In this document: piece by piece, positions 19,245-62,046 of the stretch
Position numbering within the stretch: position 1 is the stretch's first letter
How the letters are laid out: the number at the start of each line of letters is the position of its first letter
Virus record (IMG/VR): IMGVR_UViG_3300022868_000009
Span: 280,635 to 344,634 of that record
Direction: 5' to 3' (one strand)
DNA length: 64,000 bases
Made by a program: the position numbers and the translations under genes
Notes under the pieces: generated by a model
Database searches by the model: none
What the model saw: the letters and a program-made list of their open reading frames with translations, nothing else
What the model was told of the DNA's origin: nothing

Positions 19245-19637
19245 ATGAAAAATTTTTTAAATTTTATAAATAATAATCACGAATATTCAAATAATGAAAT
19301 GAATAAAATTATTAAATTCATTGGCAAATTATGTAAATATGAAAACAAAAAAGCAAACGCAATATTCAATTTTAACATATCAAAAAATATACTTAATGAT
19401 ACAGATTTTAATGCATCAGTAAGATCAAATAACATATATTCAAACGATATAAAACAAGTTACAAAAATACTTGATAAAGTATGCGAAAAATTAAATATGT
19501 ATCCAACAATAAATATTATGATTAATACATTTGGTAGATCAACAAATTATAATATTAACTGTACATTTGAATTTACAGAAAAAAATAAATTAGACATTCT
19601 TGCAACTATAGAAGGAAATAAATTAGGACTATTATAA
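19245..19637 (+). CDS. Hypothetical, C-tag family (EGNKLGLL)
   Basis: C-terminal motif. Confidence 0.75.
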   Translation: MKNFLNFINNNHEYSNNEMNKIIKFIGKLCKYENKKANAIFNFNISKNILNDTDFNASVRSNNIYSNDIKQVTKILDKVCEKLNMYPTINIMINTFGRSTNYNINCTFEFTEKNKLDILATIEGNKLGLL

Positions 19638-19982
19638 ATGAAACATCTTAAAAAATATAACGAAGAGAAAATAGAAAATAAATGGAAAAATACAATAGTA
19701 ATTTATGAATCTTACTCGGATTCATGGGTATATGTAGATGGTTCATTGATATCAGAATGGTCTGTTACCATATTTGATATATTATTAATATTATCAGAGG
19801 ATAATGTTAATATATTGAAATATAAAATATCAATGTTAACAGATCATTTTCCTCAAAATATAATTGATCATTTAAACGATCACCCAGAACAAGAATTTCC
19901 AATGTATGATTTAGATATATATGAACAAGAAATAATAAAAAGAAAAGCAGAAAAAGAAGGACAAAAAATGGGTCTGTTTTAA
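19638..19982 (+). CDS. Hypothetical, N-tag (MKHLKKYNE) + C-tag (EGQKMGLF)
   Basis: Both terminal motifs. Confidence 0.8.
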   Translation: MKHLKKYNEEKIENKWKNTIVIYESYSDSWVYVDGSLISEWSVTIFDILLILSEDNVNILKYKISMLTDHFPQNIIDHLNDHPEQEFPMYDLDIYEQEIIKRKAEKEGQKMGLF

Positions 19983-19983
19983 A

Positions 19984-20307
19984 ATGAAACATATTTCAAC
20001 ATATAACGAATACTTACAAACACCCTTAAATTTATCAATACCAATATAGAAGATAATGATAAATTTACAAATTACCTAGAACAATCAAACCTAATATCAA
20101 AAAATTCTTTATTTAGAACATATCATAAAGGATGTATATATCATACATTTTTAATATCAATTATAGATAATCATTCTTAAAAATTAGTTGTTCAAACCCA
20201 GATAATGTATCTGGGTTTGAACAAAAAGGAGTAAATGAAATATTATTTGATCCAGATATAATTATATAATTATAAGATTAGAAGCAAATAAAATGGGATT
20301 ATTATGA
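19984..20307 (+). pseudogene. Disrupted N-tag/C-tag gene
   Basis: Begins MKHISTYNE at 19984, ends EANKMGLL-TGA overlapping ATG 20304; internal stop/frameshift. Confidence 0.65.
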
Positions 20308-20585
20308 AATATTTAAAGACATACAACGAATCAAAATATAAACCATCATATACTGCACGCCCAATGCCAGATAAATATCGGCTTAGATGTGAATATTTAA
20401 TAGATAAATACGGTAAACTAAATACAAATAATAAAATTACACATTTATCAGAAGAATCAGAAATTTTACAAATAGATATAAATGATGATTATAGATTAGA
20501 TATTTTTAAAACTACTGATAAATCGTTACTTAATATGAGAGAATTAGAAATGAAATTACAAGCAAAAGAATTAGGATTGTTATAG
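20304..20585 (+). CDS. Hypothetical, N-tag (MKYLKTYNE) + C-tag (AKELGLL); paralog of 21030 and 58927 ORFs
   Basis: Shared RC.YL.DKYG motif. Confidence 0.8.
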   Translation: MKYLKTYNESKYKPSYTARPMPDKYRLRCEYLIDKYGKLNTNNKITHLSEESEILQIDINDDYRLDIFKTTDKSLLNMRELEMKLQAKELGLL

Positions 20586-20647
20586 ATTTAATGAAAAGGG
20601 GAATTTATATTATAATATATTTAATGTATCATAATTTAGCACCTTTT

Positions 20648-21029
20648 TTATAATAATCCCATTTGATTTGCCTGTTTAACATTATCGAGTGATATACCAA
20701 CATTTTTTTCTAACCAATTTTCAATTGTAATATAATTGTATTTTTTATAATCAGGATCTTGTAAATTATTTTGTAAATATACCATACTACCCCCAATTAA
20801 AATCATAATCTTTAACATTAAATATTTCATAATTTTCTTGAGAAATAGATATCAGAAAATAACTAGGTCTACCACCAGAATAACGAAAAATATAATCATA
20901 ATCTATATCAATATTATAAAAATCATCATATAATGAAAATAATACAAAATTAATACATAATATATGTATACATAATATTAAAACAGATGATATAAAATTA
21001 TTAGAAAAAATATGTTGTTTTAAGGTATT
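20648..21029 (-). pseudogene. Fragmented C-tag gene (ends ANQMGLL)
   Basis: Only the last 60 codons are open; KYLKT-like start remnant near 21015-21029. Confidence 0.5.
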
Positions 21030-21416
21030 TTATAACAATCCCATTTTTTTCGCAGTTAATATTTTTTCTATTTCAGAACCTAATAAAAATGCATTTAATT
21101 TTATGAGTATAGAATTATCTAAATCATCATATTGTACATTTCTTTCATATTCACTATCTGATAAATTATAATAATAAATAATACCGGTTGTATTAATATT
21201 ACTTTGATAAATGTCAAATTTTAAATCATCTAATTTTATTTTTATTAAATTAGTAGATGTAGATCTACCATAAAGATCAGATATTCTATTATTACCATCA
21301 TTATTTTTTTCACCGTATTTATCTAGTAAATATAAACACCTATTAAATACTTTATCAGGCATTAAATAACAATGATTTCTATTAATTTTTTCTAAATATG
21401 ATTTCAAATATCTCAT
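21030..21416 (-). CDS. Hypothetical, N-tag (MRYLKSYLE) + C-tag (AKKMGLL)
   Basis: Both terminal motifs. Confidence 0.8.
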   Translation of the reverse strand: MRYLKSYLEKINRNHCYLMPDKVFNRCLYLLDKYGEKNNDGNNRISDLYGRSTSTNLIKIKLDDLKFDIYQSNINTTGIIYYYNLSDSEYERNVQYDDLDNSILIKLNAFLLGSEIEKILTAKKMGLL

Positions 21417-21457
21417 TAATCTTATATATTAAATTTAAATAAGAATATATAAATAAT

Positions 21458-21760
21458 ATGAAATACCTTAAAACATATAATGAAAATAAATCATTTAATG
21501 ATAAAGTTAATATGATTAAAAAAATAGTAGACACCGTTGGTAAAACTGATGATAGAGGTAAAATTTTAAATTTAAACTATAAATCAAAAGGTTCTAAAAC
21601 CTATCTTTTAAAAATTCAAGATACATGCTGGATAAGTATTGAGATGATAGGTACAAGATTTTTAAGAAATTTAGATTCTAGAGTAATTGAATCTATATAT
21701 AAAGAATTAAAAGAAAAATACCCAGAGTTTTTTATGGGAGATAAATTAGGTATTTTATAA
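21458..21760 (+). CDS. Hypothetical, N-tag (MKYLKTYNE) + C-tag (GDKLGIL)
   Basis: Both terminal motifs. Confidence 0.8.
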   Translation: MKYLKTYNENKSFNDKVNMIKKIVDTVGKTDDRGKILNLNYKSKGSKTYLLKIQDTCWISIEMIGTRFLRNLDSRVIESIYKELKEKYPEFFMGDKLGIL

Positions 21761-22260
21761 AATAAAAGTCTTAAAAAATTTTCCAAAAAAATTTTCCAAA
21801 AAAATTTTAGAAACAAAATCCCAGTTTCTAAGTTATACTTTGTAACGGATACCCAAACGTAATTATATTATATATTATATTATATACACTTTTTAAATTT
21901 ACACTTTCTGACAAATACTTAATATCTACTACAAAACAGTTACTAATTTAAATGAACACTACTTACTCTATAAAAACAAACTTACTATTCTGTGATATAA
22001 AAAGTACTCTATTTACTATAAAATAGTTAATACCTTATATAGATAATACTTTATTTTAAAATAAACTTCTTTATATTATTTAAAATAAACTTCTTCATGA
22101 CCTCATATATTCACTATATCTATATATGTAGATAGGTGGCCCGTGAGCTATTTTTACTTATTATTATTAATCTTAAATTAGGAGGATTTTTATAATCCTT
22201 ATCTATTATTATTTTTTTGTCATGGATCATTGTGACATCTTTTTTTATTTTTATATTAAG
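21761..22260. other. Non-coding AT-rich region with short direct repeats; candidate replication origin
   Basis: aaaaaattttcc x3 (21773-21808), tttaaaataaacttct x2 (about 22054-22094); + strand switches from C-rich to G-rich across it. Confidence 0.4.
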
Positions 22261-22302
22261 GTTGCTTTCCTTATCTTTGTAATGAATAAAAATTATAATG
22301 AG

Positions 22303-22854
22303 ATGGAAAATTATTTTAAAATTGAACATGGAAGAAAGGTTGAGACATACACACCTAAAGATACATATGTATTAACATGGAATGAAAGACATGGTGATGC
22401 TGATCAAAGTATGCCTACATCTATGACTATACACAGTATGGATGAGTTATGGTTCATGTTATGGTTTAGTAAGTGGTTAGATAGATACAGACAGTATAGT
22501 GACTTAGATGAGTATAGTAAGGTACTTAATAAGTATAGTAAGGAGTTATTGGGTAGTAGTTGGTATATAACTGATTGGTGTAGTGATGTGTATGATCATG
22601 ATTGTATATATTCTAGTTGTTATTGTGGTGTGGATGCCATGAAGTTATATTATTATGATGAGCATGGTGTTAAGTATGAAGAGGAGATTGATGGTAGTAC
22701 ATATATATCTTTAGTGAAGATGGGATATAAGTTAGATTGTTGGTTCATTGATAAGTATCCACATATAGCTAATGAGTTACAGGGTATGATATGTGATGCT
22801 GCATTGGAAGATAAGAAGGATGTTATTGAGGCTAATAAAATGGGGTTGATATGA
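22303..22854 (+). CDS. Hypothetical, GDAD...YYYDEHGV family with C-tag (EANKMGLI)
   Basis: Start moved downstream of promoter at ~22270; paralog of 26950 and 43171. Confidence 0.75.
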   Translation: MENYFKIEHGRKVETYTPKDTYVLTWNERHGDADQSMPTSMTIHSMDELWFMLWFSKWLDRYRQYSDLDEYSKVLNKYSKELLGSSWYITDWCSDVYDHDCIYSSCYCGVDAMKLYYYDEHGVKYEEEIDGSTYISLVKMGYKLDCWFIDKYPHIANELQGMICDAALEDKKDVIEANKMGLI

Positions 22855-23183
22855 TAGATAAGAATATAGTTATAGTATCGTATAGTAAAGAGGAGTTTAA
22901 TTATGTATTGAATCTATTTAAATCTAGGGAGTTCAGTAGGTCTACGATTGATTCGTATCTACGTTACGTTAATGATGATGGTCATTATAATGATTATGTA
23001 TATCCTATTGCATTAATTGTGAGGTTTAAATTAATGTCAGCAACGTGGCAGTATAAAGATATGTGGGATCATATTAATGATTTATTAGATAGGGGTGAGG
23101 TTGATAGTGTTATTGATTGTAAAGATTTCAAAGAGATGGGTGGTGATAATTATATTGAAGGTATTAAATTAGGTTTACTTTAA
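22851..23183 (+). CDS. Hypothetical, C-tag (EGIKLGLL)
   Basis: ATGA overlap with previous tag. Confidence 0.8.
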   Translation: MIDKNIVIVSYSKEEFNYVLNLFKSREFSRSTIDSYLRYVNDDGHYNDYVYPIALIVRFKLMSATWQYKDMWDHINDLLDRGEVDSVIDCKDFKEMGGDNYIEGIKLGLL

Positions 23184-23213
23184 AGTTTAGAAGGTATTCC
23201 TTATCTTTGTATT
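23182..23213 (+). promoter_or_regulatory. Early promoter repeat aaagtttagaaggtattcc(g/t)tatctttgta containing Bacteroidota -7 element TAnnTTTG
   Basis: Near-identical copies at 23182, 25415, 26165, 30653; looser copies (GAA-N5-TCCGTAT[AC]TTTGTA) about 35 times between 22 and 61 kb. Confidence 0.85.
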
Positions 23214-23255
23214 GAATATAATTTAAAGAATAGAAAATGATAAAAGGAATAAGTA

Positions 23256-23573
23256 ATGACATATAAGGTATTGATTAAGGTTCGTAATGAATCTGAATGG
23301 ATATCATGTTGTGATATGTTGTATAGTCATGGTTATCGATGGCAAGACAATTGTATGGACTCAAAGAAGATACATGGATATAAGTTGATAAGTGAAGGTG
23401 ATATATATTTAGTTATATATAATCATACTGACCCTCATCATCATGATGATCGTTTATTTTATAATACTAATGTTAATGTTGATATTTATGGGCCGGATGT
23501 TATTATAATTAATTATGTTGAAGGTATGGATTTACATGAGATAATAGAAGTTAATAAATTGGGATTAATATGA
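23256..23573 (+). CDS. Hypothetical, C-tag (EVNKLGLI)
   Basis: Paralog of 23570 (KVRNESEW..CC.MLYSHGY.W). Confidence 0.8.
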   Translation: MTYKVLIKVRNESEWISCCDMLYSHGYRWQDNCMDSKKIHGYKLISEGDIYLVIYNHTDPHHHDDRLFYNTNVNVDIYGPDVIIINYVEGMDLHEIIEVNKLGLI

Positions 23574-23905
23574 TAGTATTTAGTAAAGATATAAAGAAAA
23601 TAAATATTAAGGTTCGTAATGAATCTGAATGGGTATCATGTTGCAATATGTTGTATAGTCATGGTTATCATTGGAATGTTGAGTCTGATTTTATGGAGAT
23701 ATATTCTGAATGTTTAGAAACTGCTAAGGAATATATTAAGACTTATGCAATAAATGATGGTATATATTTAGTTGTTTATAATGATAATAGTGGACGGTTA
23801 TATTATAATTATAAATATAAGACTGATGGTATAATAAATCTTGATTGGTATGATGGTATGGATTTACATGAGATAAATGAAGCTAATAAATTGGGGTTAA
23901 TATGA
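23570..23905 (+). CDS. Hypothetical, C-tag (EANKLGLI)
   Basis: Tandem paralog. Confidence 0.8.
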   Translation: MIVFSKDIKKINIKVRNESEWVSCCNMLYSHGYHWNVESDFMEIYSECLETAKEYIKTYAINDGIYLVVYNDNSGRLYYNYKYKTDGIINLDWYDGMDLHEINEANKLGLI

Positions 23906-24207
23906 AAGAGAAGATATACATAATATTAAATAATATAGATGATTGGATTAATTGTTGTAATCAATTAGACAATGAGGGATATTTTTGGGCAAGAAGTAGT
24001 GACTCATATAAAGATAAATATCATAAATGTAAAACTTTCGGTAATCCTGAAAATTATATAGTAATAGGTCATAATGAGTATGATGATAATCGTTTATATT
24101 ATGGTAATATATATAATGATAAGAAGTTTGATGGTATTATTTTATATTGGGATGCTGATGTAGATTTAGAAAGTTATTTTGCAGGTTTAAAAATGGGATT
24201 ATTATAA
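23902..24207 (+). CDS. Hypothetical, C-tag (AGLKMGLL)
   Basis: Tandem paralog (W..CC..L...GY.W). Confidence 0.8.
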   Translation: MKEKIYIILNNIDDWINCCNQLDNEGYFWARSSDSYKDKYHKCKTFGNPENYIVIGHNEYDDNRLYYGNIYNDKKFDGIILYWDADVDLESYFAGLKMGLL

Positions 24208-24317
24208 TAATATTTTCATGTTTGACCAGGGAGAATTTAGGTTGGAGGAAAGGGGATATTTTTATTTGGTGAAGGTTTGTTGTGTATTTGTGTATAAATT
24301 AAAATGTAAAAAAGATT

Positions 24318-24698
24318 ATGATAAAATGGATTAATATAAGGCTGGAAGGTTATGGTAAAGGTAAAGGTAAAGGTAAAGGTAAGAAGAAACTGAATAAGAT
24401 GGTTATGCGTAAATTGTTACATCAAATTGATTGTAAGGTTGGTTTTCGTATTAAGGATGGTGGATGGAAACCAGTTTTAAATAGTTTAAAAGAATATAAG
24501 CATTATAAATATATATGGATTGCTATATGTCCTTTTGGTAAAGATATGGCTGCGGATTATCATGAAAATAAAGAAGAATGGGAGAGTTATAAAGACGGTA
24601 TTGAGGCGGATGAAGCTGAGGTATGGTTGAGTTGGGAAGAGTTTATGGATTTAGATATTCAGATGATTGTTAATGGTTCTAAAATGAATTTATTATGA
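24318..24698 (+). CDS. Hypothetical, C-tag variant (GSKMNLL), GK repeat
   Basis: ORF track. Confidence 0.75.
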   Translation: MIKWINIRLEGYGKGKGKGKGKKKLNKMVMRKLLHQIDCKVGFRIKDGGWKPVLNSLKEYKHYKYIWIAICPFGKDMAADYHENKEEWESYKDGIEADEAEVWLSWEEFMDLDIQMIVNGSKMNLL

Positions 24699-25087
24699 AA
24701 GATATAAAGTGGATAAATATAATGTTAGACTGGGATAAGTTTAAGTGGGAACAATTCCATGATGTTGTTGATTATTATAAAGAGTTATTTCCTAAATTAG
24801 ATTGGACAACTGTTCAAACTGAGATACAGATACATGATAAAATTCGAAATGAATCTGTTTTTGATATTTTAGGTTTATCTATATGTTTGGAACATGATAG
24901 TAATGATTTTAATATTAATAATTGTGAAAATACTATAAATAATTGGCATCCTGTTATATTTAAGTATGGTATTGGTGATGATTTATATGACAAGCAAACT
25001 GGTATTGAAATAATTGTTAAATATAGTAAAGATTTCCGTGAAGAGATTGAGTTTTATTTAGAGGGTTCTAAAATGGGTTTATTATGA
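24695..25087 (+). CDS. Hypothetical, C-tag (EGSKMGLL)
   Basis: ATGA overlaps both sides; related to 51002. Confidence 0.8.
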   Translation: MKDIKWINIMLDWDKFKWEQFHDVVDYYKELFPKLDWTTVQTEIQIHDKIRNESVFDILGLSICLEHDSNDFNINNCENTINNWHPVIFKYGIGDDLYDKQTGIEIIVKYSKDFREEIEFYLEGSKMGLL

Positions 25088-25416
25088 AAAAAACAATAAT
25101 ATTTTTACATAACAATAAGGATTTGGGCAACTTGTTCATGTATTTACATGTTATTGGATGCAAATGGTCTAGTGGTAGACCTATTATAATAGATAGTGAA
25201 ATACAAAGATTTAATTTATCTTGTTCTAGATCTAAATCTGTTGCAATTATCGTTGATGATGGTAGTCTTACTTATGTATCAAATAAGAAAGATATTGTTT
25301 ATAGTTATATATCTGGTGATAAATTTAAATATTATGATCATTATGAGTATGTAGATTTTGATAAGGAGTTTGATATTGATGTAACTATTAATGGTAATAA
25401 GATGGGATTACTTTAA
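25084..25416 (+). CDS. Hypothetical, C-tag (NGNKMGLL)
   Basis: Paralog of 25469/25801 (YLH.IG.KW, YDHYEY). Confidence 0.8.
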   Translation: MKKTIIFLHNNKDLGNLFMYLHVIGCKWSSGRPIIIDSEIQRFNLSCSRSKSVAIIVDDGSLTYVSNKKDIVYSYISGDKFKYYDHYEYVDFDKEFDIDVTINGNKMGLL

Positions 25417-25468
25417 AGTTTAGAAGGTATTCCGTGTCTTTGTATTATAATTAAAGGAGGAAACAAAA

Positions 25469-25804
25469 ATGAAAATGATAATATATGCACATAATGACGA
25501 AGATATTTATAAGTTATCAACTTATTTACATTATATTGGAATTAAATGGCAAACTGAAATTTTTATTATGAATGATGGTGAAATGACAATAGATTGTAAT
25601 AGAGCTGAATCTAAATCTATTGCATTTTGTGTTAAAAATAATCGTGTGTCATATATGAATGATGGTGGTTCTTTTGGTGGTGATGTTTATAATTTTTTCA
25701 AAAGGCAACCATATGAATGTTATGACCATTATGAGTATATTGAATTTGATAAGGAGTTTGGTGTTGATATGGTTTTAGAATCAATAAAGATGGGTTTATT
25801 ATGA
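25469..25804 (+). CDS. Hypothetical, C-tag (ESIKMGLL)
   Basis: Promoter and AGGAGG upstream. Confidence 0.8.
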   Translation: MKMIIYAHNDEDIYKLSTYLHYIGIKWQTEIFIMNDGEMTIDCNRAESKSIAFCVKNNRVSYMNDGGSFGGDVYNFFKRQPYECYDHYEYIEFDKEFGVDMVLESIKMGLL

Positions 25805-26166: not shown

Positions 26167-26218
26167 AGTTTAGAAGGTATTCCGTATCTTTGTATTATAA
26201 TTAAAAAGGAGAAGAAAA

Positions 26219-54590: not shown

Positions 54591-54620
54591 ATTAAAGACT
54601 ATGTTTTAAATTAAATAACA

Positions 54621-55240: not shown

Positions 55241-55603
55241 TAGTCCGAGTTTATTTCCTTGTATCAATATATCAAGATCCATTCCATATTCTTTTTTTAA
55301 CCAATCATCACAACTTATAAAAGAATCTTTATAAAATGACACATATTCTAATAGAAACTTCATTGAGCTCCAACACTTATCAAAGCGTTGACCATCATCT
55401 AATGTAAAAAATGTTTTATCTTTTGAAAAAGCAACCCAAAAATTTTCTTTAAAATTTACTCTAGAATATTCTATATCATATTTTTCCTCAATTAATTTTA
55501 TTATAAATTTTGTTTCTTTATGAGGTATATCAGTTATTACAACAATATTATCCTCTTTATTTTCATTGTATGTATTAAGATATTTCATTTTCAAATGTTT
55601 CAA
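55235..55603 (-). CDS. Hypothetical, doubled N-tag (KHLK-MKYLNTYNE) + C-tag (QGNKLGLL)
   Basis: Both motifs; core related to 61463/61750 (ITDIP). Confidence 0.8.
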   Translation of the reverse strand: MKHLKMKYLNTYNENKEDNIVVITDIPHKETKFIIKLIEEKYDIEYSRVNFKENFWVAFSKDKTFFTLDDGQRFDKCWSSMKFLLEYVSFYKDSFISCDDWLKKEYGMDLDILIQGNKLGLL

Positions 55604-55611
55604 ATCTTATT

Positions 55612-56163
55612 TTGTTTTATATATTAATTTGTTTTTTTAGAATATTTTTTTTATCTTTCAATATGAAAATAAATATAATGTATGCGGGGATGGCGGATGA
55701 TATTATGCTTCCAATGTTACAAGTTCCAACTTTCATAATAATCCAAGTTTATTTGCTTCTATTTTTATTTGATGGAGCCTTTGCTAGAAATGGTTGGGAA
55801 AGTCAAAAAGAAGATATAAGACAAACGTTATTGTCTGGTAATAATGAGAATTCATGGCACAGGGAGGTATATTTAAAATATGAATCAGACACTCCAACTT
55901 TTTCATTAGAAGAAAAATGTGTTATATTATCTGATATAGATAAAGATGAATGTTGGAAATTGACATTTGATTATAATGGAAAGCGCAGAGAACTAATTTA
56001 TTATCATCATCAAAACTTTTATGATGTGTGGCCTGATAATATAAAGGATATTAATCATTTATTTAGTATTGGTGCTACTTTTGAATATTTAACAGAACCT
56101 AAATTAAAAGAAATGTTGAAGACAAGATGTACTGGTTATTTATATGATCAAGTGACACCATAA
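55612..56163 (+). CDS. Hypothetical protein, start uncertain
   Basis: ORF track. Confidence 0.5.
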   Translation: MFYILICFFRIFFLSFNMKINIMYAGMADDIMLPMLQVPTFIIIQVYLLLFLFDGAFARNGWESQKEDIRQTLLSGNNENSWHREVYLKYESDTPTFSLEEKCVILSDIDKDECWKLTFDYNGKRRELIYYHHQNFYDVWPDNIKDINHLFSIGATFEYLTEPKLKEMLKTRCTGYLYDQVTP

Positions 56164-56217
56164 GAAACAGAAATAATTCAAATGAATAGAAGGATTTATA
56201 TTAATAAAATAGATATA

Positions 56218-56697
56218 TTAATATAATCCCATTTTATTTGCATTATAAAGGTCTGGATTTTCTTTCCAAAACCATTCCCAATATTCTTCTAAATTATTAT
56301 AAGGTAATTGGTTATTATAACAATTTAAATATTCTAATCTTTTAGATAATTCAGGTAATTCAGTTAATTGGTTACCATCACAATCTAAATATTTTAACTC
56401 TTTTGGTAATTCAGGCAATTTAGTTAATTTATTATTATAACAATATAATATTTCTAACCCTTTTGGTAGTTCAGGTAATTCAATTAATTTGTTGTTGTCA
56501 CAATATAACATTTCTAATCCTTTTGGTAATTCAGGTAATTCAGTTAATTGATTATTATAACACATTAATTTTTCTAACCCTTTAGGTAATTCAGGTAATT
56601 CAGTTAAATTTAAATTAACTAAATTTAATATTTTACCATCATCACTTAGATGATCTTTTATTAATTGGTTTTCTGAATATGTTTTTAAATATTTCAT
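56218..56697 (-). CDS. Leucine-rich-repeat protein (20-aa LPELPKGLE.L.C.NN.L repeats) with N-tag and C-tag
   Basis: About 5 LPX-type repeats; MKYLKTYSE...ANKMGLY. Confidence 0.9.
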   Translation of the reverse strand: MKYLKTYSENQLIKDHLSDDGKILNLVNLNLTELPELPKGLEKLMCYNNQLTELPELPKGLEMLYCDNNKLIELPELPKGLEILYCYNNKLTKLPELPKELKYLDCDGNQLTELPELSKRLEYLNCYNNQLPYNNLEEYWEWFWKENPDLYNANKMGLY

Positions 56698-56718
56698 CTA
56701 TTTTATAATTTTATTGAC

Positions 56719-57102
56719 TTACATAAGTCCTAATTTACCTGATTCAAATACATATGGGTTATTATGAAAGAATATTTTCATAATAAATAATATTAGTTCA
56801 TAATCTTTTATTATTTGGTGTCCATCATTTTTATTTGAAGATTCTTTTATCCAATTTGGATCTGATACAACTGCAACTTGCTGTTCAACTTTTTGTAATA
56901 TTATTTGAAATAGATTTCCTTCTCGTTTTAACACAATAGTTGTGTATACTCCGTTATAATCTATTTCAAGGAATCCATTTCTAATATAAATTTTAAATTT
57001 GGTATCTTTAAACATATCTTTTATTGTATCAACAAAGAAATCTTGATTGTTATCATTAACTGAAATCTCATTTATCATTTGATATGTCTTTAAATGTTTC
57101 AT
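56719..57102 (-). CDS. Hypothetical, N-tag (MKHLKTYQMINE) + C-tag (ESGKLGLM)
   Basis: Both motifs. Confidence 0.8.
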   Translation of the reverse strand: MKHLKTYQMINEISVNDNNQDFFVDTIKDMFKDTKFKIYIRNGFLEIDYNGVYTTIVLKREGNLFQIILQKVEQQVAVVSDPNWIKESSNKNDGHQIIKDYELILFIMKIFFHNNPYVFESGKLGLM

Positions 57103-57123
57103 CTATTTTATAATTTTATTGAC

Positions 57124-57492
57124 TTACAAGACACCAAGATTTTTTGTCCCATTATACATATTTATCATATTTTGTAATTCATTCATAAATTCATCTTTAG
57201 TTATTAATATATCTGAGTGTTTATAATAACCGCAAGGACCATAAATACGATTTAATTTATAATGAATTGTTCTACTTTCATGTTGTACACAGCAACTATA
57301 CACCATTTTTCTTTTATCTTCCTCTTTTTCAAGTATATCACAACATAATTCTATTTTTGTTCTATGTACATCAAATTTAAAATCATTTATAAGTTTATCA
57401 TATATTTCAATTGCTTCTTTTGCGTTATTAAATTCAACTGATATAAACTTATCTTCATCTATATTTTCATTATATGTTTTAAGGTATTTCAT
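57124..57492 (-). CDS. Hypothetical, N-tag (MKYLKTYNE) + C-tag (TKNLGVL)
   Basis: Both motifs. Confidence 0.8.
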   Translation of the reverse strand: MKYLKTYNENIDEDKFISVEFNNAKEAIEIYDKLINDFKFDVHRTKIELCCDILEKEEDKRKMVYSCCVQHESRTIHYKLNRIYGPCGYYKHSDILITKDEFMNELQNMINMYNGTKNLGVL

Positions 57493-57962
57493 TATAATAA
57501 TCCTAGTTTATTTGCTTCTAAATCTGCTTTAAGGTCTTCACTTTTAAGGTATTCTAATATTTGTGAAAGTTTTTTATAATTTTTTAAATTTTTACTAACC
57601 CTTGTTAAAAGACTAAATTTATCTCTATTATTATCTTCAATAAGATAAGCAATAACATCAACAATTTTACTAGTATTAATATCAACTGAATCTAATACTT
57701 CTAGATGTGTATAATTACCTAATTTAATATTTTCTGGTATTTTTATAAATACTTGTTCATATTTATCACCATGTAAAATATATTGATATTTATTATATAT
57801 TTTAGCACATTCCTTTTTAATATCTGATATTAGTTTATTAAAATTATCAAAAATTGTTTTATCATTTATTTGTTTATAAAGCAATTCTTTTTGTTTATAA
57901 AATGATTCTTGTTGTTTATAGTTTTCTTCTATGTTTTCGTTATATGTTTCACTTATGATCAT
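57492..57962 (-). CDS. Hypothetical, degenerate N-tag (ETYNE) + C-tag (EANKLGLL)
   Basis: ORF track. Confidence 0.75.
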   Translation of the reverse strand: MIISETYNENIEENYKQQESFYKQKELLYKQINDKTIFDNFNKLISDIKKECAKIYNKYQYILHGDKYEQVFIKIPENIKLGNYTHLEVLDSVDINTSKIVDVIAYLIEDNNRDKFSLLTRVSKNLKNYKKLSQILEYLKSEDLKADLEANKLGLL

Positions 57963-58082
57963 ATTGTTTTGTTTGTTTTATATATTAATTTGTTTTTTTA
58001 GAATTTTTTTCTTATATTACAATAATTATTAAAAATTATGAAAGAATTAATTTGGTTAAATATATGTTATAAAGGTCTTATG

Positions 58083-58325
58083 TCAAAAGAAATGTATTTC
58101 TACATATTCATCTATGATGATTGGATGATATCTTTTAATATCTCTCACTATATCATCTACAATTTCTTTTAGTTTTATTATATCTGTATTTGGTGGAACA
58201 AATAAGTAAATTTCTGAATCATCTTTACACAAACCCTTTTTATTCAAATAATATGGTGTATTTTTAAATATATCATCAATAATATATTTAAATTTAAATG
58301 ATTCATACTTTTTTATATATTTCAT
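58083..58325 (-). CDS. Hypothetical, N-tag only (MKYIKKYES)
   Basis: ORF track. Confidence 0.7.
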   Translation of the reverse strand: MKYIKKYESFKFKYIIDDIFKNTPYYLNKKGLCKDDSEIYLFVPPNTDIIKLKEIVDDIVRDIKRYHPIIIDEYVEIHFF

Positions 58326-58335
58326 AATTATTAGA

Positions 58336-58746
58336 TTATAAAAGACCCATTTGACCTGTTATTAATAATCTTTTTACTTTTTTTAATGGTACTAAATAAT
58401 TTTCCCAGTTTTCTGGACTATCATCTATACCATCTGTTATATCTTTATCTTCCCAAACAGATATTGGTATTTTATTATCCTTTGTAAAGATAGTGTTTGC
58501 ACCATTTTGATCAAATCGTATAATCTCTTCATCAAATAAATTAAAAATTGTTCGACTTGTTTTTATATTATCATCAATATATGAATTATAGTCAGTAATT
58601 AAATGTTTTGCATATTGATTAAACCATTTACAACCATTCTTTATAGCTAAATTAGTATAAGTAAAATATTCATCAATATTACTTACTTCAAACACAAATA
58701 ATACATTTGGTATTGTACTTTCATTATATGTTTTTAAATATTTCAT
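58336..58746 (-). CDS. Hypothetical, N-tag + C-tag (TGQMGLL)
   Basis: Both motifs. Confidence 0.8.
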   Translation of the reverse strand: MKYLKTYNESTIPNVLFVFEVSNIDEYFTYTNLAIKNGCKWFNQYAKHLITDYNSYIDDNIKTSRTIFNLFDEEIIRFDQNGANTIFTKDNKIPISVWEDKDITDGIDDSPENWENYLVPLKKVKRLLITGQMGLL

Positions 58747-58926
58747 TATAGTTTATATATTTATTTTTTTATTTAAGAAAATTTTAACTATTTTTTTAAT
58801 ACCTTTAGTTTTAACTATTGGTATATTTTTAAAATAATTATTTAATTCATCAACCATTTTAATTCTTAACTTAGATGTAATGGTCATAGACTTAGCAAAT
58901 TGATTATATGTGTCTAATTTATTCAT

Positions 58927-59352
58927 TTATAATAGTCCTAATTTAGTAGATTCAAATTTTGATTCTATATTTTCACTATGAATATATTCTATTATTTTTT
59001 CTTCAAATTCCGTAGAGCAACTCTCAATATAATAATTAGTGTCATTCACAGATTGAAGAAATATTCTATAAGAAGTCGAAATTTCTTCATCATACTTTAT
59101 GATATATAATGATAAATCATCATCTGGATCTACAATTGTTCTTCTATCTATATTAGTAGGTTTATCTATAAAATCTGAACCAGATACATTTACTTTAACA
59201 TCTGTTCTACTATTCAAATATTCATTAGGTTTACCATATTTATTTATTAAATACTCACATCTATATAATAATTCTTCATCATCTTTATAAATATGATGAA
59301 CAGTACCATTATCATATATTAATGATTCATTATAAGTTTTTAAATATTTCAC
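58927..59352 (-). CDS. Hypothetical, N-tag + C-tag (ESTKLGLL)
   Basis: Both motifs; RCEYLI.KYG family. Confidence 0.8.
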   Translation of the reverse strand: MKYLKTYNESLIYDNGTVHHIYKDDEELLYRCEYLINKYGKPNEYLNSRTDVKVNVSGSDFIDKPTNIDRRTIVDPDDDLSLYIIKYDEEISTSYRIFLQSVNDTNYYIESCSTEFEEKIIEYIHSENIESKFESTKLGLL

Positions 59353-59471
59353 AAGACTATATATTAATTTTTTATTTTAAGATAAATTTTCTATATTAAA
59401 ATTATGGATATTAAAGAAAACCTTAAAAATTATTATGAAATTAGATAAATATTTCTTAATTAAAGATAAAT

Positions 59472-59795
59472 ATGATTAAAATTAATATTACGGGAATTAA
59501 TTGTAATGAATTTGAAAAGTTACAAAAAATATTCTTTGATCAAAATATACCTTGGTATTATAGTGGTTATAAATTACAATCATCCGATGATTGTAATTAT
59601 TATCATAACATTTATATTGTTTCAAAAATCGTTGTCATGAGAAATGATAACCATGAAAAAGAAGAATATTATATGACCTTTAAAAAAGATAATATAATCT
59701 CAAAAGACCAAGATTTAATTGAATATAAATATGATGAAATGGATGAGAATACATTAAAAAGTTATTTTAACGGTTTACAACTAGGATTATTATGA
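59472..59795 (+). CDS. Hypothetical, C-tag (NGLQLGLL)
   Basis: ORF track. Confidence 0.8.
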   Translation: MIKINITGINCNEFEKLQKIFFDQNIPWYYSGYKLQSSDDCNYYHNIYIVSKIVVMRNDNHEKEEYYMTFKKDNIISKDQDLIEYKYDEMDENTLKSYFNGLQLGLL

Positions 59796-60110
59796 TATCA
59801 ATAAATATAGAAAATATAAGTCTAAATGACTTCAAGAAATTGCAAATACATATGATTGATCAAAATATTCCTTGGATTGATGGTGATTGGGAAGTTTGGG
59901 TAGATGGATATTGGTCATTTATAATTAATCATAAAAAAAAATATCTTACTAATTGATCAATATACATCAACTGGTAAACCAGTTGATGGTTACCTTAGAT
60001 ATAATATGCAATTGTGTAATGTTTCATCTCCAATCGTTTTAAGTGTTGAAGAAATGCTTGATTTAAATATATACGAATATTTGGAGGCGAAAAAGTTTAA
60101 TTTATTATAA
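59792..60110 (+). pseudogene. Frameshifted paralog of 59472 (ends EAKKFNLL)
   Basis: DQNIPW motif; frame breaks near A-run at 59933-59941. Confidence 0.65.
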
Positions 60111-60355
60111 TAGATCCATCTTATTCGATGCAATATACTCTTGTAAATTAAAATCTTTAGTTATATCAGAACCATTTAACTTACCTAACAAAATACCAAT
60201 TTCAGTATATTTTTCAATAATTTGATTATAAAACCAAGTAGTCCAATGATTTCCAATATAAGTTTTATCATCTATATTAATTAGTAAATTAATTTCTTTC
60301 CAAAACCATTCCTTATATCACTAATACTTTCATCATATGTCTTTAAGTATTTCAT
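60105..60355 (-). pseudogene. Disrupted N-tag/C-tag gene (MKYLKTYDE ... ASNKMDLL)
   Basis: Both termini readable, frame broken. Confidence 0.65.
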
Positions 60356-60572
60356 GAATAATTTAAAAACTTTTGTTTTATATATTAAAATTTAGATTTG
60401 AATATCAATACCCAGAATTTATATTCCAACCTCTACAATATCATAAAATTAATTTTTATACCAAGAAATATTCCTTATATTTAAGTATTGGAATTTCGAA
60501 AAAATTGAAGAATTTTTATTTTTTGAACAAATTCCGTATATTATAAATGATGAAATACATAAACTACTAAAT

Positions 60573-61463
60573 ATGGAAGAAAAAACAAAAATATTATTAA
60601 ACGGCAAAGAAAATAAGAGCGAACTTATTAACTTACTTACAAAAGTTGATGTTTCTTGCTCTACTCGTGAACTAAATTCTGAGTTGATAGTTAAAATCAA
60701 ACATTTTAACAAATGTATCGAAGAAAATATCGAATTCAGAAATAAATTCAATGTTAATGAAAGATTTGAGTTCTTAGAAGATCTTACCAACATGATTATT
60801 GATGGTAAAGGTAACTCATTGATAGTTATAGGTGAAGGTGGACTTGGTAAAACATTTACTGTATTAAGCACTTTATCAAAAAGAACAAAAACTGGATTTC
60901 TAAACCTTTTCAAGAAAAAAGAAGATGTTCACATAGTTAAAGGTTTCTCAACAGCTAGAGGTCTATATGATACATTATATGATAATAGAGATAAATTAAT
61001 TTTATTTGACGACTGTGATTCAATCTTAGAAGATAAAACAGCTATTAATATTTTAAAATCAGCTTTAGATTCTTATGATACTAGAATCGTTACATGGTCT
61101 AAATTTTTGAAAAATAAAAACAATTATCCACAATCATTCGAATTTACAGGTAGAATAATCTTTATCTCAAATAAAAAGAAAACTCAAATACCACAACCAA
61201 TCTTAACAAGAGGTTATGTAGTTGATTTAGAAATGAGCAATGGTGAGAAAATCGACAGAATGGCTCACATCATGCCAACACTTATCGAAGATAAAGGTAA
61301 AGGTAGATGGAGTTTAAATGATGGTTTTACGGCTTTAGAATTCATTAGAATAAATATAGATGATGTTAAAGAACTAAGTATTAGAACATTAGTAGATGTT
61401 TTAAGAATAATGAAATCAAGAAAAAATTGGGAAAAATTAGCTTTATATACAATAACAGAATAA
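60573..61463 (+). CDS. AAA+/P-loop ATPase
   Basis: Walker A GEGGLGKT, Walker B ILFDDCD, IIFISN, ILTR. Confidence 0.85.
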   Translation: MEEKTKILLNGKENKSELINLLTKVDVSCSTRELNSELIVKIKHFNKCIEENIEFRNKFNVNERFEFLEDLTNMIIDGKGNSLIVIGEGGLGKTFTVLSTLSKRTKTGFLNLFKKKEDVHIVKGFSTARGLYDTLYDNRDKLILFDDCDSILEDKTAINILKSALDSYDTRIVTWSKFLKNKNNYPQSFEFTGRIIFISNKKKTQIPQPILTRGYVVDLEMSNGEKIDRMAHIMPTLIEDKGKGRWSLNDGFTALEFIRINIDDVKELSIRTLVDVLRIMKSRKNWEKLALYTITE

Positions 61464-61753
61464 TGACAACATATATAACAGATATACCATCAGAATATAT
61501 ATTATATCTTGATAAAATAATCAGTGAATATTATAATATGAAATCTATAATTAGACCTAATAAAAGAATCATAAAATATGATTATTATTTTATAAGTATC
61601 AATAAATATAATGATAATTGTCTGTGTTATTCAGGTATGTGTTATTTACATGAACTCATAGGACCAACCAGTGAAACTATTAATTATGTTGATTGGTTAG
61701 AAAAACATAATTTAACATACAAATTAGAATCAACCAAATTAGGATTATTATGA
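61463..61753 (+). CDS. Hypothetical, C-tag (ESTKLGLL)
   Basis: Tandem paralog of 61750. Confidence 0.8.
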   Translation: MTTYITDIPSEYILYLDKIISEYYNMKSIIRPNKRIIKYDYYFISINKYNDNCLCYSGMCYLHELIGPTSETINYVDWLEKHNLTYKLESTKLGLL

Positions 61754-62046
61754 CATTATATATAACAGACATACCTCAAAAAGAAATATTATATCTTGAT
61801 AAAATAATCAGTGAATATTATAATATGGAAACTATAACTCGTAGTATTAATAGAATTAATTTCACATTATATGATTATATTTATATAAGTGTTGGTAAAA
61901 ATTGTACTGAGGGATTATATTATTCAGATATGAATTATTTAAAACATATTAAAAAACAGAACCATAAAACTATCAATTATATTGATTGGTTGAAAAAGAA
62001 TAATTTATTCTATAAATTAGAATCAGCCAAATTAGGATTATTATGA
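61750..62046 (+). CDS. Hypothetical, C-tag (ESAKLGLL)
   Basis: Tandem paralog. Confidence 0.8.
   Translation: MTLYITDIPQKEILYLDKIISEYYNMETITRSINRINFTLYDYIYISVGKNCTEGLYYSDMNYLKHIKKQNHKTINYIDWLKKNNLFYKLESAKLGLL

What the first reader, a model, noticed from the sequence alone, without database searches (positions are those of the whole stretch)
19245..62046. About 50 small, diverse phage proteins share one C-terminal tag, ~E-x-x-K-[ML]-G-L-[LI]-COOH
Seen: by my count 51 ORFs of mostly 90-210 aa end in KMGLL/KLGLL or close variants (KMGLF, KLGLI, QMGLL, NMGVL, KMNLL, KFNLI), always exactly at the stop codon, on both strands. They belong to many different core families, including an LRR protein. 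No recognisable enzyme or structural gene carries the full tag. Codons vary synonymously (GGA/GGT/GGG/GGC, TTA/CTA/TTG/CTT, AAA/AAG), so selection acts on the peptide and not only on the DNA. Known precedents for free C-terminal signals include the T4 gp45 clamp-binding tails (SLDFL-type, on gp33/gp55/gp43) and C-terminal degrons read by Tsp/Prc or ClpX. Inference: this is a shared address label that docks a large, variable effector set onto one receptor (a phage or host chaperone, protease, clamp or compartment), or saturates it as a decoy. I know no described system of this scale.
Basis: partly seen in the sequence, partly recalled or inferred. Interest (0 to 1): 0.93.

Follow-up and report, generated by a model that had tools for sequence, protein, structure and literature searches.

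The report
Shared C-terminal tag on phage proteins
About fifty small, fast-changing proteins of a giant salt-lake phage all end, exactly at the stop codon, in the same 9-14-residue peptide (…E-[SGA]-x-K-[ML]-G-L-L); selection keeps the peptide, not the DNA, and it probably grew out of the end helix of one common phage domain, but what reads it is unknown.

Summary
Fifty non-overlapping ORFs and six gene fragments between 19.2 and 62.0 kb end in K[ML]GLL-like peptides directly before a stop. The tight motif occurs 42 times at a stop and never inside a real ORF (0.08 expected). The conserved unit is the last 14 residues, [DE]-[LIF]-x3-[ILFY]-E-[SGA]-x-K-[ML]-G-L-L. Synonymous sites in the tag are as free as in gene bodies. 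Among 40 listed strain variants none falls in a tag, and 32 of 36 body changes are non-synonymous.

The claim of many families needs trimming. Nineteen of the 50 share one widespread, uncharacterised phage domain ("domain A"). In related phages that domain is strung into polyprotein-like repeats, each ending in a helix with the tag's spacing followed by a P-S-Y-K-P-R-K junction. So the tag looks like an exapted terminal helix. It also sits on unrelated bodies: an LRR solenoid, phrog_8562 and others.

My best reading is a peptide-level docking or sorting signal read at the free C-terminus by one common partner. The partner was not identified. Rivals are a purely structural helix, virion loading, clamp binding and a DNA-level element (disfavoured). 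I found no description of it. It is a new variant of the "shared terminal address" theme known from the T4 capsid-targeting sequence.

The parts
19245..21760 (.). Six tagged ORFs: 19245-19637(+), 19638-19982(+), 20304-20585(+), 20648-20830(-), 21030-21416(-) and 21458-21760(+). A tag-only fragment lies at 20290-20307(+). Most also start with the N-terminal motif MKYLKTYNE.
22222..26166 (+). Array of ten tagged ORFs, many with ATGA stop/start overlaps. They start at 22222 (phrog_8562 body), 22851, 23256, 23570, 23902, 24318, 24695, 25084, 25469 and 25801. It is syntenic with metagenome contig L056, whose orthologues keep the tag.
26470..32530 (+). Six tagged ORFs interspersed with untagged genes in the same operons: 26470-26736 (RIGVL), 27734-28063, 29082-29408, 29439-29744, 29884-30315 (KLGLS) and 32207-32530.
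40651..43803 (+). Tagged ORFs 41187-41513 (KFNLI), 41850-42221 (KLNLI) and 43126-43803 (NLGLL, phrog_8562 body). A 60-codon frame ending in QKLGLL lies at 40651-40668.
48335..55240 (+). Array of 14 tagged + strand ORFs, starting at 48352, 48686, 49238, 49534, 50358, 50680, 51002, 51382, 52484, 53186, 53504, 53877, 54621 and 54899. Decayed copies that keep only the tag lie at 48335-48352, 49224-49241 and 52064-52081.
   Evidence: AlphaFold2 model of 49238-49534
52802..59352 (-). Eight tagged - strand ORFs that nearly all also carry the N-terminal motif MKYLKTYNE: 52802-53146, 55235-55603, 56218-56697 (LRR protein, KMGLY), 56719-57102, 57124-57492, 57492-57962, 58336-58746 and 58927-59352. A fragment lies at 55733-55750.
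59472..62046 (+). Tagged ORFs 59472-59795, 61427-61753 and 61750-62046. They flank an untagged AAA+ ATPase (60573-61463, phrog_1250). Locus L001 shows the tagged series continuing beyond the window.
22268..44725 (+). Promoter-like motif TCCGTAT[AC]TTT[GA], of the Bacteroidota -7 type TAnnTTTG. It stands in front of the operons that hold most + strand tagged genes, the tRNAs, the HU paralogues, SprT and the RNA ligase. Twenty-four exact copies lie here, all on the + strand.
   Evidence: (43 matches with up to 1 mismatch against 8.3 expected)
55618..59369 (-). Second promoter-like motif A[AT]T[AT]AATATATA, 13-31 nt before the ATG of genes with the N-terminal motif. Examples on the - strand here are 55618, 57979, 58754 and 59358. 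The same motif stands before the 869-aa structural operon (10151) and, in looser form, before the RNase H-like and PolB-exonuclease-like genes.

Best explanation
The tag is a peptide-level C-terminal docking or sorting signal. It consists of a short amphipathic helix, [DE]-[LIF]-x3-[ILFY]-E-[SGA]-x-K-[ML], capped by Gly and ending in a free hydrophobic -L-L-COOH.

Origin (shown). The tag has the spacing of the terminal helix of a widespread phage module, domain A. In related phages that module is chained into polyprotein-like repeats, each ending D-h-x-x-h-x-x-h-h-K-x-G-x-h followed by P-[ST]-Y-x-P-[KR]-[KR]...R-E-S.

What happened in this lineage (inferred). The modules became separate genes. 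The helix end was sharpened to K-[ML]-G-L-L-stop. It then spread, by duplication and by recombination at the conserved ends, to other bodies: the LRR proteins, phrog_8562 and the MKYLKTYNE class.

What it does (inferred). It hands a large, acidic, fast-diversifying set of small accessory proteins to one common partner that needs the free C-terminus. Most of these genes stand behind host-type promoters, so they are probably early. Receptors known to read free hydrophobic C-termini are AAA+ unfoldase/protease systems and PDZ-type binders. My first guess is therefore a hand-over or lifetime signal, that is a bipartite degron or adaptor tag. Loading into the virion is the second guess.
For: - The tight motif stands 42 times before a stop, never inside a real ORF and never with an extension.
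- Fourteen conserved positions.
- No excess codon identity at synonymous sites: 53.5% observed against 56.5% expected. This excludes a DNA or RNA motif and gene conversion as the cause.
- Strain variants: none in the 504 nt of tags, against 36 in bodies of which 32 are non-synonymous.
- Orthologues in L056 at 30-55% identity keep the tag, and the untagged gene 26219 stays untagged.
- Tag arrays occur in other contigs with GC 21-31%.
- The tag sits on different folds. The domain A model is alpha/beta. The LRR model is a solenoid, and confidence in the tag there drops to 78. phrog_8562 matches stop before the tag. Only 19 of 50 bodies are domain A.
- Domain A homologues outside the lineage lack the tag.
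- The helix spacing is shared with polyprotein modules, whose helix end is looser: KYGKL, LFGSI, KTGQI, KLGII.
- Tagged proteins are acidic, with median pI 5.2 against 7.5 for untagged ones. They lie in promoter-dense operons.
Against: - No receptor was identified and no binding could be modelled.
- AlphaFold2 places the tag helix of domain A with pLDDT 92-97. That fits an integral structural helix as well as a docking helix.
- In polyprotein relatives the homologous helix is internal. A free end is therefore not needed there, unless those proteins are cleaved.
- About 40% of the tagged proteins are one family, so common descent explains part of the sharing. The tree cannot exclude a single origin of the tag within domain A.
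- Tagged genes fall into two promoter classes, which a simple early-protein timer does not predict.
- A degron would not obviously need a 14-residue helix.
Confidence: 0.42

Rival explanations
1. The tag is a purely structural, inherited element. It is the last helix plus hydrophobic anchor of one hugely expanded module superfamily and stabilises each protein's own fold. There is no shared receptor. The apparent unrelated bodies are very diverged or chimeric members.
For: - Nineteen of 50 bodies are detectably one domain, and more share the beta-strand/helix/'LGYxW' start by eye.
- AlphaFold2 models the tag as a confident helix of the domain, pLDDT 92-97.
- The same helix spacing occurs inside polyprotein repeats of relatives.
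- A single origin of the tag within domain A is not excluded.
Against: - The tag is far better conserved than any core position: G 47/50 and L 46/50, against a mean column identity of 11%.
- It is present on an LRR solenoid and on phrog_8562 bodies.
- There is never a C-terminal extension, although the fold tolerates a continuing chain in relatives.
- Domain A homologues elsewhere do without this sequence.
Confidence: 0.28
2. The tag is a virion-loading (cargo) signal. It docks the proteins to the inside of the procapsid or to scaffold or portal, so that they are packaged and injected. This would parallel the T4 capsid-targeting sequence or the C-terminal targeting peptides that bind the HK97-fold shell of encapsulins. 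Polyprotein relatives would be processed in the head.
For: - T-even internal proteins are a diverse anti-defence set that shares only a terminal ~10-aa capsid-targeting sequence, MKTYQEFIAE.
- A subset of tagged genes also starts with MKYLKTYNE, which shares K-T-Y-[QN]-E. AlphaFold2 gives that N-terminal stretch pLDDT below 50.
- Those genes carry the A[AT]TATATA motif that also precedes the 869-aa ORF heading the operon that also holds the baseplate wedge-like gene.
- Encapsulin cargo uses a short C-terminal GSLxIGSLK peptide on unrelated cargo families.
- The junctions of polyprotein relatives end in h-[RK]-E-S, which resembles T4-type prohead-protease sites. The site rule L/I-x-E is from memory.
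Against: - Most tagged genes sit behind the host-type promoter together with tRNAs, HU and RNA ligase, which looks early rather than late.
- The proteins are acidic, unlike the basic T4 internal proteins IPII and IPIII.
- The N-terminal motif also heads an RNase H-like protein.
- There is no flexible linker before the tag.
- No virion proteome or transcript data exist, and no RNA run was listed.
Confidence: 0.15
3. The tag is a sliding-clamp-binding motif. K[ML]GL[LF]-COOH would be a variant of the bacterial beta-clamp motif (QL[SD]LF; Pol II ends in QLGLF, both from memory) or of the T4 gp45-binding tails. It would tether the proteins to the host or phage clamp, or block that clamp.
For: - Variants QLGLL, QLGLI, QMGLL, KLGLF and KMGLF occur in the window.
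- Clamp partners share one short peptide motif, often at a terminus (abstract of PMC3716654).
Against: - Q at the first position occurs in only 4 of 50; K dominates.
- The conserved unit is a 14-residue helix, not a pentapeptide.
- None of the replication-type proteins in the window (RNase H-like, PolB-exonuclease-like, RNA ligase) carries it.
- Fifty or more clamp ligands have no precedent.
- Clamp motifs do not need the very C-terminus.
Confidence: 0.05
4. The tag is a DNA- or RNA-level element. The conserved gene ends would serve as homology arms for cassette shuffling, as signals for termination-reinitiation coupling, or as part of downstream promoters. The peptide would be a by-product.
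For: - Tag-only fragments and decayed copies show frequent rearrangement at tags.
- Fourteen of 50 stops are TGA in ATGA overlaps with the next start.
- The Gly codon in the tag is biased to GGA/GGG.
- At 25% GC, peptide conservation gives fairly similar DNA anyway.
Against: - Synonymous positions in tags of unrelated genes are no more alike than codon usage predicts: 53.5% against 56.5%.
- Twenty-nine of 50 tags have no coupled downstream gene.
- Orthologues too diverged for recombination keep the peptide.
- Only a few tags are followed by a promoter motif.
Confidence: 0.05

Closest known systems
T4 capsid-targeting sequence (CTS) of the T-even internal proteins
   Same: Both are one short terminal peptide shared by a diverse, fast-evolving set of small phage accessory proteins that otherwise have nothing in common. 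The N-terminal motif MKYLKTYNE, which co-occurs with the tag, even shares K-T-Y-[QN]-E with MKTYQEFIAE.
   Different: The CTS is N-terminal and is cleaved off. The tag here is at the very C-terminus. The set is about 50 to more than 77 proteins rather than a handful. The proteins are acidic. Most genes look early. Packaging is not shown.
Encapsulin targeting peptides (cargo-loading peptides, e.g. GSLxIGSLK)
   Same: Both are short, conserved, usually C-terminal peptides with alternating hydrophobic residues and Gly, placed on unrelated cargo families. Encapsulin peptides dock to one site on an HK97-fold shell.
   Different: The sequences differ: K[ML]GLL after a helix against an extended GSLxIGSL after a flexible linker. 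There is no shell gene next to the tagged genes, and the number of different carriers is far larger. No binding is shown.
C-terminal degrons (ssrA tag ...YALAA-COOH read by SspB and ClpX; non-polar C-terminal tails read by FtsH or Tsp)
   Same: Both have a strict need for the free C-terminus, a hydrophobic end, and possibly a bipartite layout with an upstream part for an adaptor and the last residues for the unfoldase. This comparison rests on established knowledge and was not tested here.
   Different: ssrA is added co-translationally by tmRNA and is not gene-encoded on 50 proteins. The sequences are unrelated. No phage is known to encode such a tag across a proteome. Degradation is untested.
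Bacterial beta-clamp-binding motif QL[SD]LF and T4 gp45-binding tails
   Same: Both are a pentapeptide with L/M at position 2 and L and F/L at positions 4-5, often at a C-terminus. Some tags read QLGLL or KLGLF.
   Different: K replaces Q in 39 of 50. The conserved unit is 14 residues. The carriers are not replication proteins.
Polyvalent or polyprotein-like multi-module phage proteins
   Same: Related phages chain the same modules (domain A and others) in one ORF with conserved junctions. Large multidomain polyvalent proteins injected with phage DNA are described in the literature (PMC7824862).
   Different: In this window the modules are separate genes. The polyprotein-like relatives have no recognised enzymatic domains, and their processing is unknown.
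MIM helices at the C-termini of ESCRT-III paralogues, read by the MIT domain of the AAA+ ATPase Vps4 (from memory)
   Same: Both are a family-wide C-terminal amphipathic helix, (D/E)xxLxxRLxxL(K/R)-COOH in ESCRT-III, that docks many paralogues to one AAA+ machine. This is an analogy for how the tag might work.
   Different: ESCRT-III proteins are eukaryotic and archaeal, belong to one protein family, and show no sequence relation to the tag. This is an analogy only.

Membership tests
T4-type capsid-targeting sequence | About 10 residues at the N-terminus of the precursor | tested here: not met
   The tag is at the extreme C-terminus. Only the separate N-terminal motif MKYLKTYNE is N-terminal.
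T4-type capsid-targeting sequence | Cleaved by the prohead protease after Glu; the protein is found inside the capsid | not testable with these tools
   No proteome is available and no RNA run was listed. The N-terminal motif ends in N-E-[NS], and AlphaFold2 gives it pLDDT below 50.
Encapsulin targeting peptide | Consensus GSLxIGSL(K/R)-like, after a flexible linker | tested here: not met
   The consensus here is E-[SGA]-x-K-[ML]-G-L-L and is predicted helical with no linker. The encapsulin consensus comes from PMC10960027.
Encapsulin targeting peptide | Encoded next to an HK97-fold shell gene whose inner face binds the peptide | tested here: inconclusive
   No capsid gene was recognised in the window. 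There is only a weak Phage_capsid_2 hit, E = 0.0046, for 26950-27459. The rest of the 348-kb genome was not available.
Beta-clamp-binding motif | Q at position 1, L/M at 2, L at 4, F/L at 5 | tested here: not met
   Q occurs in 4 of 50 and K in 39 of 50. Positions 2, 4 and 5 fit.
Beta-clamp-binding motif | Carried by replication and repair proteins | tested here: not met
   The RNase H-like, PolB-exonuclease-like and RNA ligase proteins lack it. The carriers have no known domains apart from LRR.
C-terminal degron (ssrA/ClpX type or non-polar tail) | Free hydrophobic C-terminal residues required | tested here: met
   The tag is always directly before the stop and its last two residues are hydrophobic in nearly all of the 50. 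This shows position only, not degradation.
C-terminal degron (ssrA/ClpX type or non-polar tail) | The tag shortens half-life through a protease | not testable with these tools
   This needs reporter stability assays.
   Bodies form 34 BLAST clusters. A body-only profile unites only 19 of 50. AlphaFold2 gives an alpha/beta domain for one and an LRR solenoid for another. phrog_8562 is a third family.
Domain A (uncharacterised phage domain; beta-strand, helix, 'LFxLGYxW') | Match to a body-only profile built from tagged and untagged members | tested here: met
   Nineteen tagged ORFs and two untagged fragments match at E < 0.005. There are 64 representatives in 1.84 billion proteins, mostly untagged and often tandem. 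The fold matches only uncharacterised phage proteins.

The most novel reading that the evidence does not exclude
A giant phage lineage runs a proteome-scale C-terminal sorting code. At least 77 different small proteins of several folds carry one gene-encoded 14-residue helix with a -GLL-COOH end, which a single reader recognises. It would set the fate (lifetime, packaging or location) of a hyper-diversifying arsenal. The signal was exapted from the terminal helix of a module that relatives string into polyproteins, and it is paired in part of the set with a T4-CTS-like N-terminal peptide.
Probability: 0.35. Interest if true: 0.88.

Novelty: new variant of a known kind. Interest (0 to 1): 0.68.

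Why it matters
If one reader recognises this tag, it would be the largest set of phage proteins known to share an address peptide. It would also be a natural handle. The tag would mark, by sequence alone, the accessory arsenal of an uncultured clade of giant phages. It would offer a portable 14-residue signal for steering a protein's fate in their hosts. It would also show how a structural helix can be turned into a sorting signal when a polyprotein is broken into genes, or the reverse.

The contrast between frozen tags and bodies with an 8:1 ratio of non-synonymous to synonymous strain changes points to an arms-race gene set that is worth screening for anti-defence functions.

If the tag is only structural, the finding still defines a very large, unannotated phage domain family and its modular architecture.

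Tried and rejected
- Profile search of all 50 tagged ORFs (alignment A1) against 5.8 billion proteins found only the window's own protein, because the short motif cannot reach the E-value needed at that database size.
- Full-text searches for KMGLL and for the N-terminal motif strings found nothing relevant. General searches on huge phages and C-terminal motifs found nothing. The jumbo-phage review PMC7824862 does not mention such a tag.
- Megablast of 13 kb against 50,697 phage records gave no match. tblastn and the word-indexed protein search with the 22222 protein gave no informative relatives.
- PDB sequence search and Foldseek against the PDB gave no relative for domain A. The ESM Atlas gave only 'hypothetical protein'.
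- The AAA ATPase at 60573 was examined as a candidate reader. It belongs to a widespread phage AAA+ family (phrog_1250), has no PDB or NCBIfam match and is not specific to this lineage.
- Sigma-70 promoter scan: no enrichment, 137 found against 129 expected.
- The tree of domain A bodies was too poorly resolved to date or count origins of the tag.
- An extended two-helix C-terminal module of about 25 aa ('SLEEY...' plus tag) is seen by eye in many members. A gapped alignment of the last 34 residues did not support it.
- No RNA-seq run was listed, so expression timing rests on promoter-like motifs only.

Full report
**What the window is.** The window has 25% G+C. The 869-aa ORF at 7518-10127(-) has its best relatives (43% identity) in the 735-kb and 630-640-kb uncultured 'huge phage' records LR756501-LR756504. 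The window also encodes:
- a baseplate wedge-like protein, an M23 peptidase, thymidylate synthase, glycosyltransferases, an RNase H-like protein, an RNA ligase, a SprT-like protein, a truncated GluRS/GluQRS-like protein and a PolB-type exonuclease;
- three HU paralogues and nine tRNAs.

It is part of IMG/VR contig 3300023257_000007 (348 kb), which is nearly identical to 3300022868_000009. Its DNA is held by many salt-lake metagenome runs and two marine ones. A promoter-like motif, TCCGTAT[AC]TTTG, contains the Bacteroidota -7 element TAnnTTTG (that consensus is from my own knowledge). This points to a Bacteroidota host.

**The observation.** I rebuilt ORFs in all six frames.
- Fifty of 138 non-overlapping ORFs end in a K[ML]GLL-like pentapeptide, 40 on the + strand and 10 on the - strand, with a median length of 110 aa.
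- The tight form [KQ][ML]GL[LIF] lies directly before a stop 42 times and elsewhere three times. Shuffles give 0.08 and 1.3.
- The three 'internal' cases are in non-coding frames. Six further terminal copies are remnants of decayed genes.
- No real ORF has the motif inside it, and none has even one residue after it.
- Right-aligned, the conserved part is 14 residues, [DE]-[LIF]-x3-[ILFY]-E-[SGA]-x-K-[ML]-G-L-L. Before that there is only a weak acidic and hydrophobic pattern.

**Peptide or DNA?** I compared tags of genes from different BLAST clusters. Where both have the same residue, they use the same codon in 53.5% of cases. The codon usage of their own bodies predicts 56.5%. So there is no DNA- or RNA-level conservation and no homogenisation by gene conversion. 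The one oddity is the Gly codon, where GGA is 53% in tags against 22% in bodies (p = 3e-6). I cannot explain this. It is only slightly stronger where a downstream gene is coupled.

Contigs from four other runs laid on 22222-28063 gave 40 well-supported strain differences. Thirty-six are in gene bodies (32 non-synonymous, 4 synonymous), four are intergenic, and none is in the 504 nt that encode the 12 tags there, where about 3.3 would be expected. Only 40 of 92 differences were listed, and some are clustered, so this is indicative rather than a formal dN/dS.

A 2.9-kb contig from another sample (L056, 31% G+C) is syntenic with 22.2-26.7 kb. Its orthologues are 30-55% identical and keep the tag in drifted form (RKMDLI, LRMGLL, IKMDLM, NVMGLL, IEMGLL, LKMGLL, QLMGVI). 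The orthologue of the untagged gene 26219 is untagged too.

Tag arrays also occur:
- elsewhere in the same genome;
- in IMG/VR contigs of 166 kb and 88 kb;
- in short contigs with 21-30% G+C.

In all I saw 77 distinct tagged proteins, plus those of L054-L057.

**How many families?**
- With the last 18 residues removed, BLASTP at 1e-3 gives 34 clusters for the 50 ORFs. That overstates the diversity.
- By eye, many of the ~100-aa proteins begin with a beta-strand, a helix and 'LFxLGYxW'.
- A profile of a nine-member cluster, searched against 1.84 billion representatives, found 64 proteins. Most have no tag, and many hold 2-7 tandem copies of the domain.
- Cultured Rheinheimera, Nonlabens, Ralstonia and Acinetobacter phages encode it as 'hypothetical protein'.
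- A body-only profile, iterated on the window, unites 19 of the 50 tagged ORFs and two untagged fragments. I call this domain A.

AlphaFold2 on 49238-49534 with a 44-sequence alignment gives a confident model (pLDDT 89.5, pTM 0.79). Its order of elements is beta-alpha-alpha-beta-beta-beta-alpha-alpha. It has no PDB neighbour and only uncharacterised phage neighbours in BFVD.

The other tagged proteins are not domain A by any test I could run. At least two more families have relatives elsewhere:
- LRR proteins: Pfam LRR_4 at 8e-17, with a solenoid model at pLDDT 90.8;
- phrog_8562: ORFs 22222 and 43126, where the profile match stops before the tag.

**Where the tag comes from.** Several of the 64 hits are long proteins made of domain A and other modules: P0057, P0032, P0019, P0010, P0036 and P0027. 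In these, every domain A copy ends in D-h-x-x-h-x-x-h-h-K-x-G-x-h, for example ILKLGII, LLKYGKL and YLKFGVI. A conserved junction, P-[ST]-Y-x-P-[KR]-[KR]-I-I-R-E-S, follows directly. The junction also ends these proteins.

The D-to-K and K-to-G spacings are the same as in the tag. P0057 lies in a contig syntenic with the window, with an 877-aa homologue, a glycosyltransferase and a PolB exonuclease. So in relatives the 'tag' is the terminal helix of a module inside a polyprotein-like chain. In the window's phage the modules are separate genes that stop right after a sharpened version of that helix end.

The part after the junction resembles the N-terminal motif MKYLKTYNE[SN], which heads about 15 ORFs in the window. 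Compare P0027 '...KIKKFESF' with 58083(-) 'MKYIKKYESF'. Of 27 distinct proteins with that start, 19 have the strict tag and two a variant. Both ends of a module are thus conserved, in split and in fused form.

**Structure of the tag.** In the domain A model the tag is helix 85-95 plus four coil residues (M-G-L-L). pLDDT is 97 for residues 81-90 and 92 for 91-99. In the LRR model it is helix 148-155 plus G-L-Y, with confidence falling to 78. The N-terminal MKYLKTY has pLDDT below 50. I could not read the coordinates, so I do not know whether the -LL end is buried.

**Expression context (inferred from motifs only).**
- TCCKTATMTTTR has 43 matches against 8.3 expected. All 25 exact copies are on the + strand, 24 of them between 22.2 and 44.8 kb. 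They stand before operons that mix tagged and untagged small genes, tRNAs, HU, SprT and the RNA ligase. This looks like an early, host-polymerase class.
- A[AT]T[AT]AATATATA has 12 matches against 3.2 expected. It lies 13-31 nt before the ATG of the genes with the N-terminal motif and of the 869-aa structural operon. A looser form precedes the RNase H-like and PolB-exonuclease-like genes. This looks like a phage-specific middle or late class, possibly with very short leaders.

The tag therefore occurs in both classes. Tagged proteins are acidic, with median pI 5.2 against 7.5 for untagged ORFs of 80 aa or more.

**What it most likely is.** Five points are shown.
- The tag is a peptide under purifying selection.
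- It is fixed at the free C-terminus.
- It sits on several folds.
- It occurs in a fast-diversifying, tandemly duplicated gene set with decayed copies.
- It is related to a module's terminal helix.

Two points are inferred. First, the helix was exapted into a docking or sorting signal for one common reader. Second, the absolute ban on extensions points to a reader of free hydrophobic C-termini. A structural helix would tolerate a continuing chain, and it does so in the polyprotein relatives. By established knowledge, the classes that read free hydrophobic C-termini are AAA+ unfoldase/protease systems (ssrA-ClpX, non-polar tails and FtsH) and PDZ-type binders. A bipartite layout, with the helix for an adaptor and -GLL for the pore, would parallel ssrA.

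I give the generic docking model 0.42. The purely structural reading gets 0.28. Virion loading, in the manner of the T4 CTS or encapsulin peptides, gets 0.15. Clamp binding and a DNA-level element get about 0.05 each. The remainder is unassigned.

**Comparison with what is known.** The nearest documented concept is the T4 capsid-targeting sequence. [quoted passage not shown] Encapsulin targeting peptides are the nearest C-terminal analogue (PMC10960027). The tag fails the defining sequence or position features of the CTS, the encapsulin peptide and the clamp motif. Of the degron definition it meets only the positional feature. I found no paper that describes it. I therefore rate it a new variant of a known kind, a shared terminal address peptide on diverse phage proteins. 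The function is open.

Noticed in passing
window 19638, 20304, 21030(-), 21458, 52802(-), 55235(-), 56218(-), 56719(-), 57124(-), 58083(-), 58336(-), 58927(-); also 11525 and 18135(-): The N-terminal motif M-K-Y-L-K-T-Y-N-E-[NS] heads about 15 ORFs in the window and 27 distinct proteins in the lineage. Nineteen to 21 of those also carry the C-terminal tag. It shares K-T-Y-[QN]-E with the T4 capsid-targeting sequence MKTYQEFIAE. It resembles the segment after the junction in polyprotein relatives. AlphaFold2 gives it pLDDT below 50. It also heads an RNase H-like protein.
   Followed up: partly
P0057 (L051:10001-11752), P0032, P0019 (L052, L053), P0010, P0036, P0027: Related phages encode polyprotein-like chains of 2-8 small modules (domain A and others). 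The modules are separated, and the proteins terminated, by a conserved junction P-[ST]-Y-x-P-[KR]-[KR]-I-I-R-E-S. Whether the junction is cleaved is unknown. h-[RK]-E|S resembles T4-type prohead-protease sites.
   Followed up: partly
window 22268-44725 (+), and 60472: The promoter-like motif TCCGTAT[AC]TTT[GA] has 25 exact copies, all on the + strand. With up to 1 mismatch there are 43 matches against 8.3 expected. It contains the Bacteroidota -7 element TAnnTTTG, which suggests a Bacteroidota host and an early-gene region with roughly one promoter per kb.
   Followed up: partly
window 10151(-), 11401, 19228, 21423(-), 55618(-), 57979(-), 58754(-), 59358(-), 62052: A second motif, A[AT]T[AT]AATATATA, has 12 matches against 3.2 expected. 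It lies 13-31 nt upstream of start codons of the N-motif genes and of the 869-aa ORF that heads the operon with the baseplate wedge-like gene. A looser form, A[AT]TATATA, precedes the RNase H-like and PolB-exonuclease-like genes. It is possibly a phage-specific promoter that gives very short leaders, reminiscent of the T4 late TATAAATA.
   Followed up: partly
window 22222-28063: Strain-level variants from other salt-lake and marine runs are overwhelmingly non-synonymous in the bodies of the small genes (32 against 4). There are also indels, a 15-nt insertion after 23045, and many contig break-points and joints around 26.1-26.8 kb. The array is a hot spot of diversification and rearrangement.
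   Followed up: partly
tag position -3 in all tagged ORFs: The Gly codon of the tag is GGA or GGG in 31 of 47 cases, whereas GGT is 71% in the bodies of the same genes (chi-square p = 3e-6). This is unexplained. A mini Shine-Dalgarno role for coupled downstream genes fits only weakly.
   Followed up: partly
window 20290-20307, 48335-48352, 49224-49241, 51756-52081, 55733-55750(-): Decayed or truncated copies of tagged genes keep only the tag end. For example, a frame-broken duplicate of 51002-51382 survives as 51756-51887 plus 52064-52081.
   Followed up: no
window 28696-29010, 36566-37000, 42643-42951: There are three paralogous HU-type DNA-binding proteins (Pfam Bac_DNA_binding, E about 1e-30). 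All end in ...AEEREELG[IL] and each stands behind its own copy of the host-type promoter motif.
   Followed up: partly
window 33091-41891: A cluster of nine tRNA genes (Lys, Glu, Tyr, Pro, Phe, Arg, Gln, Met, Leu) is interleaved with small ORFs, an RNA ligase (39046-40029) and, elsewhere, a HAD_SAK_2 RNA-repair-type domain (10963-11400).
   Followed up: no
window 62362-63189: A 275-aa protein holds only the catalytic domain of GluRS/GluQRS, below the NCBIfam cut-offs for both. It ends in ...EFNNGLL, a partial look-alike of the tag.
   Followed up: no
L052 (11.8 kb): This contig carries the same 620-aa and 910-aa polyprotein genes twice in inverted orientation around a central gene. It is either an assembly palindrome or a real inverted duplication.
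   Followed up: no
window 60573-61463: An AAA+ ATPase of the widespread phage family phrog_1250 (function unknown) is embedded between tagged genes, and its 3' end overlaps the first of two tagged ORFs. It has no PDB or NCBIfam match.
   Followed up: partly
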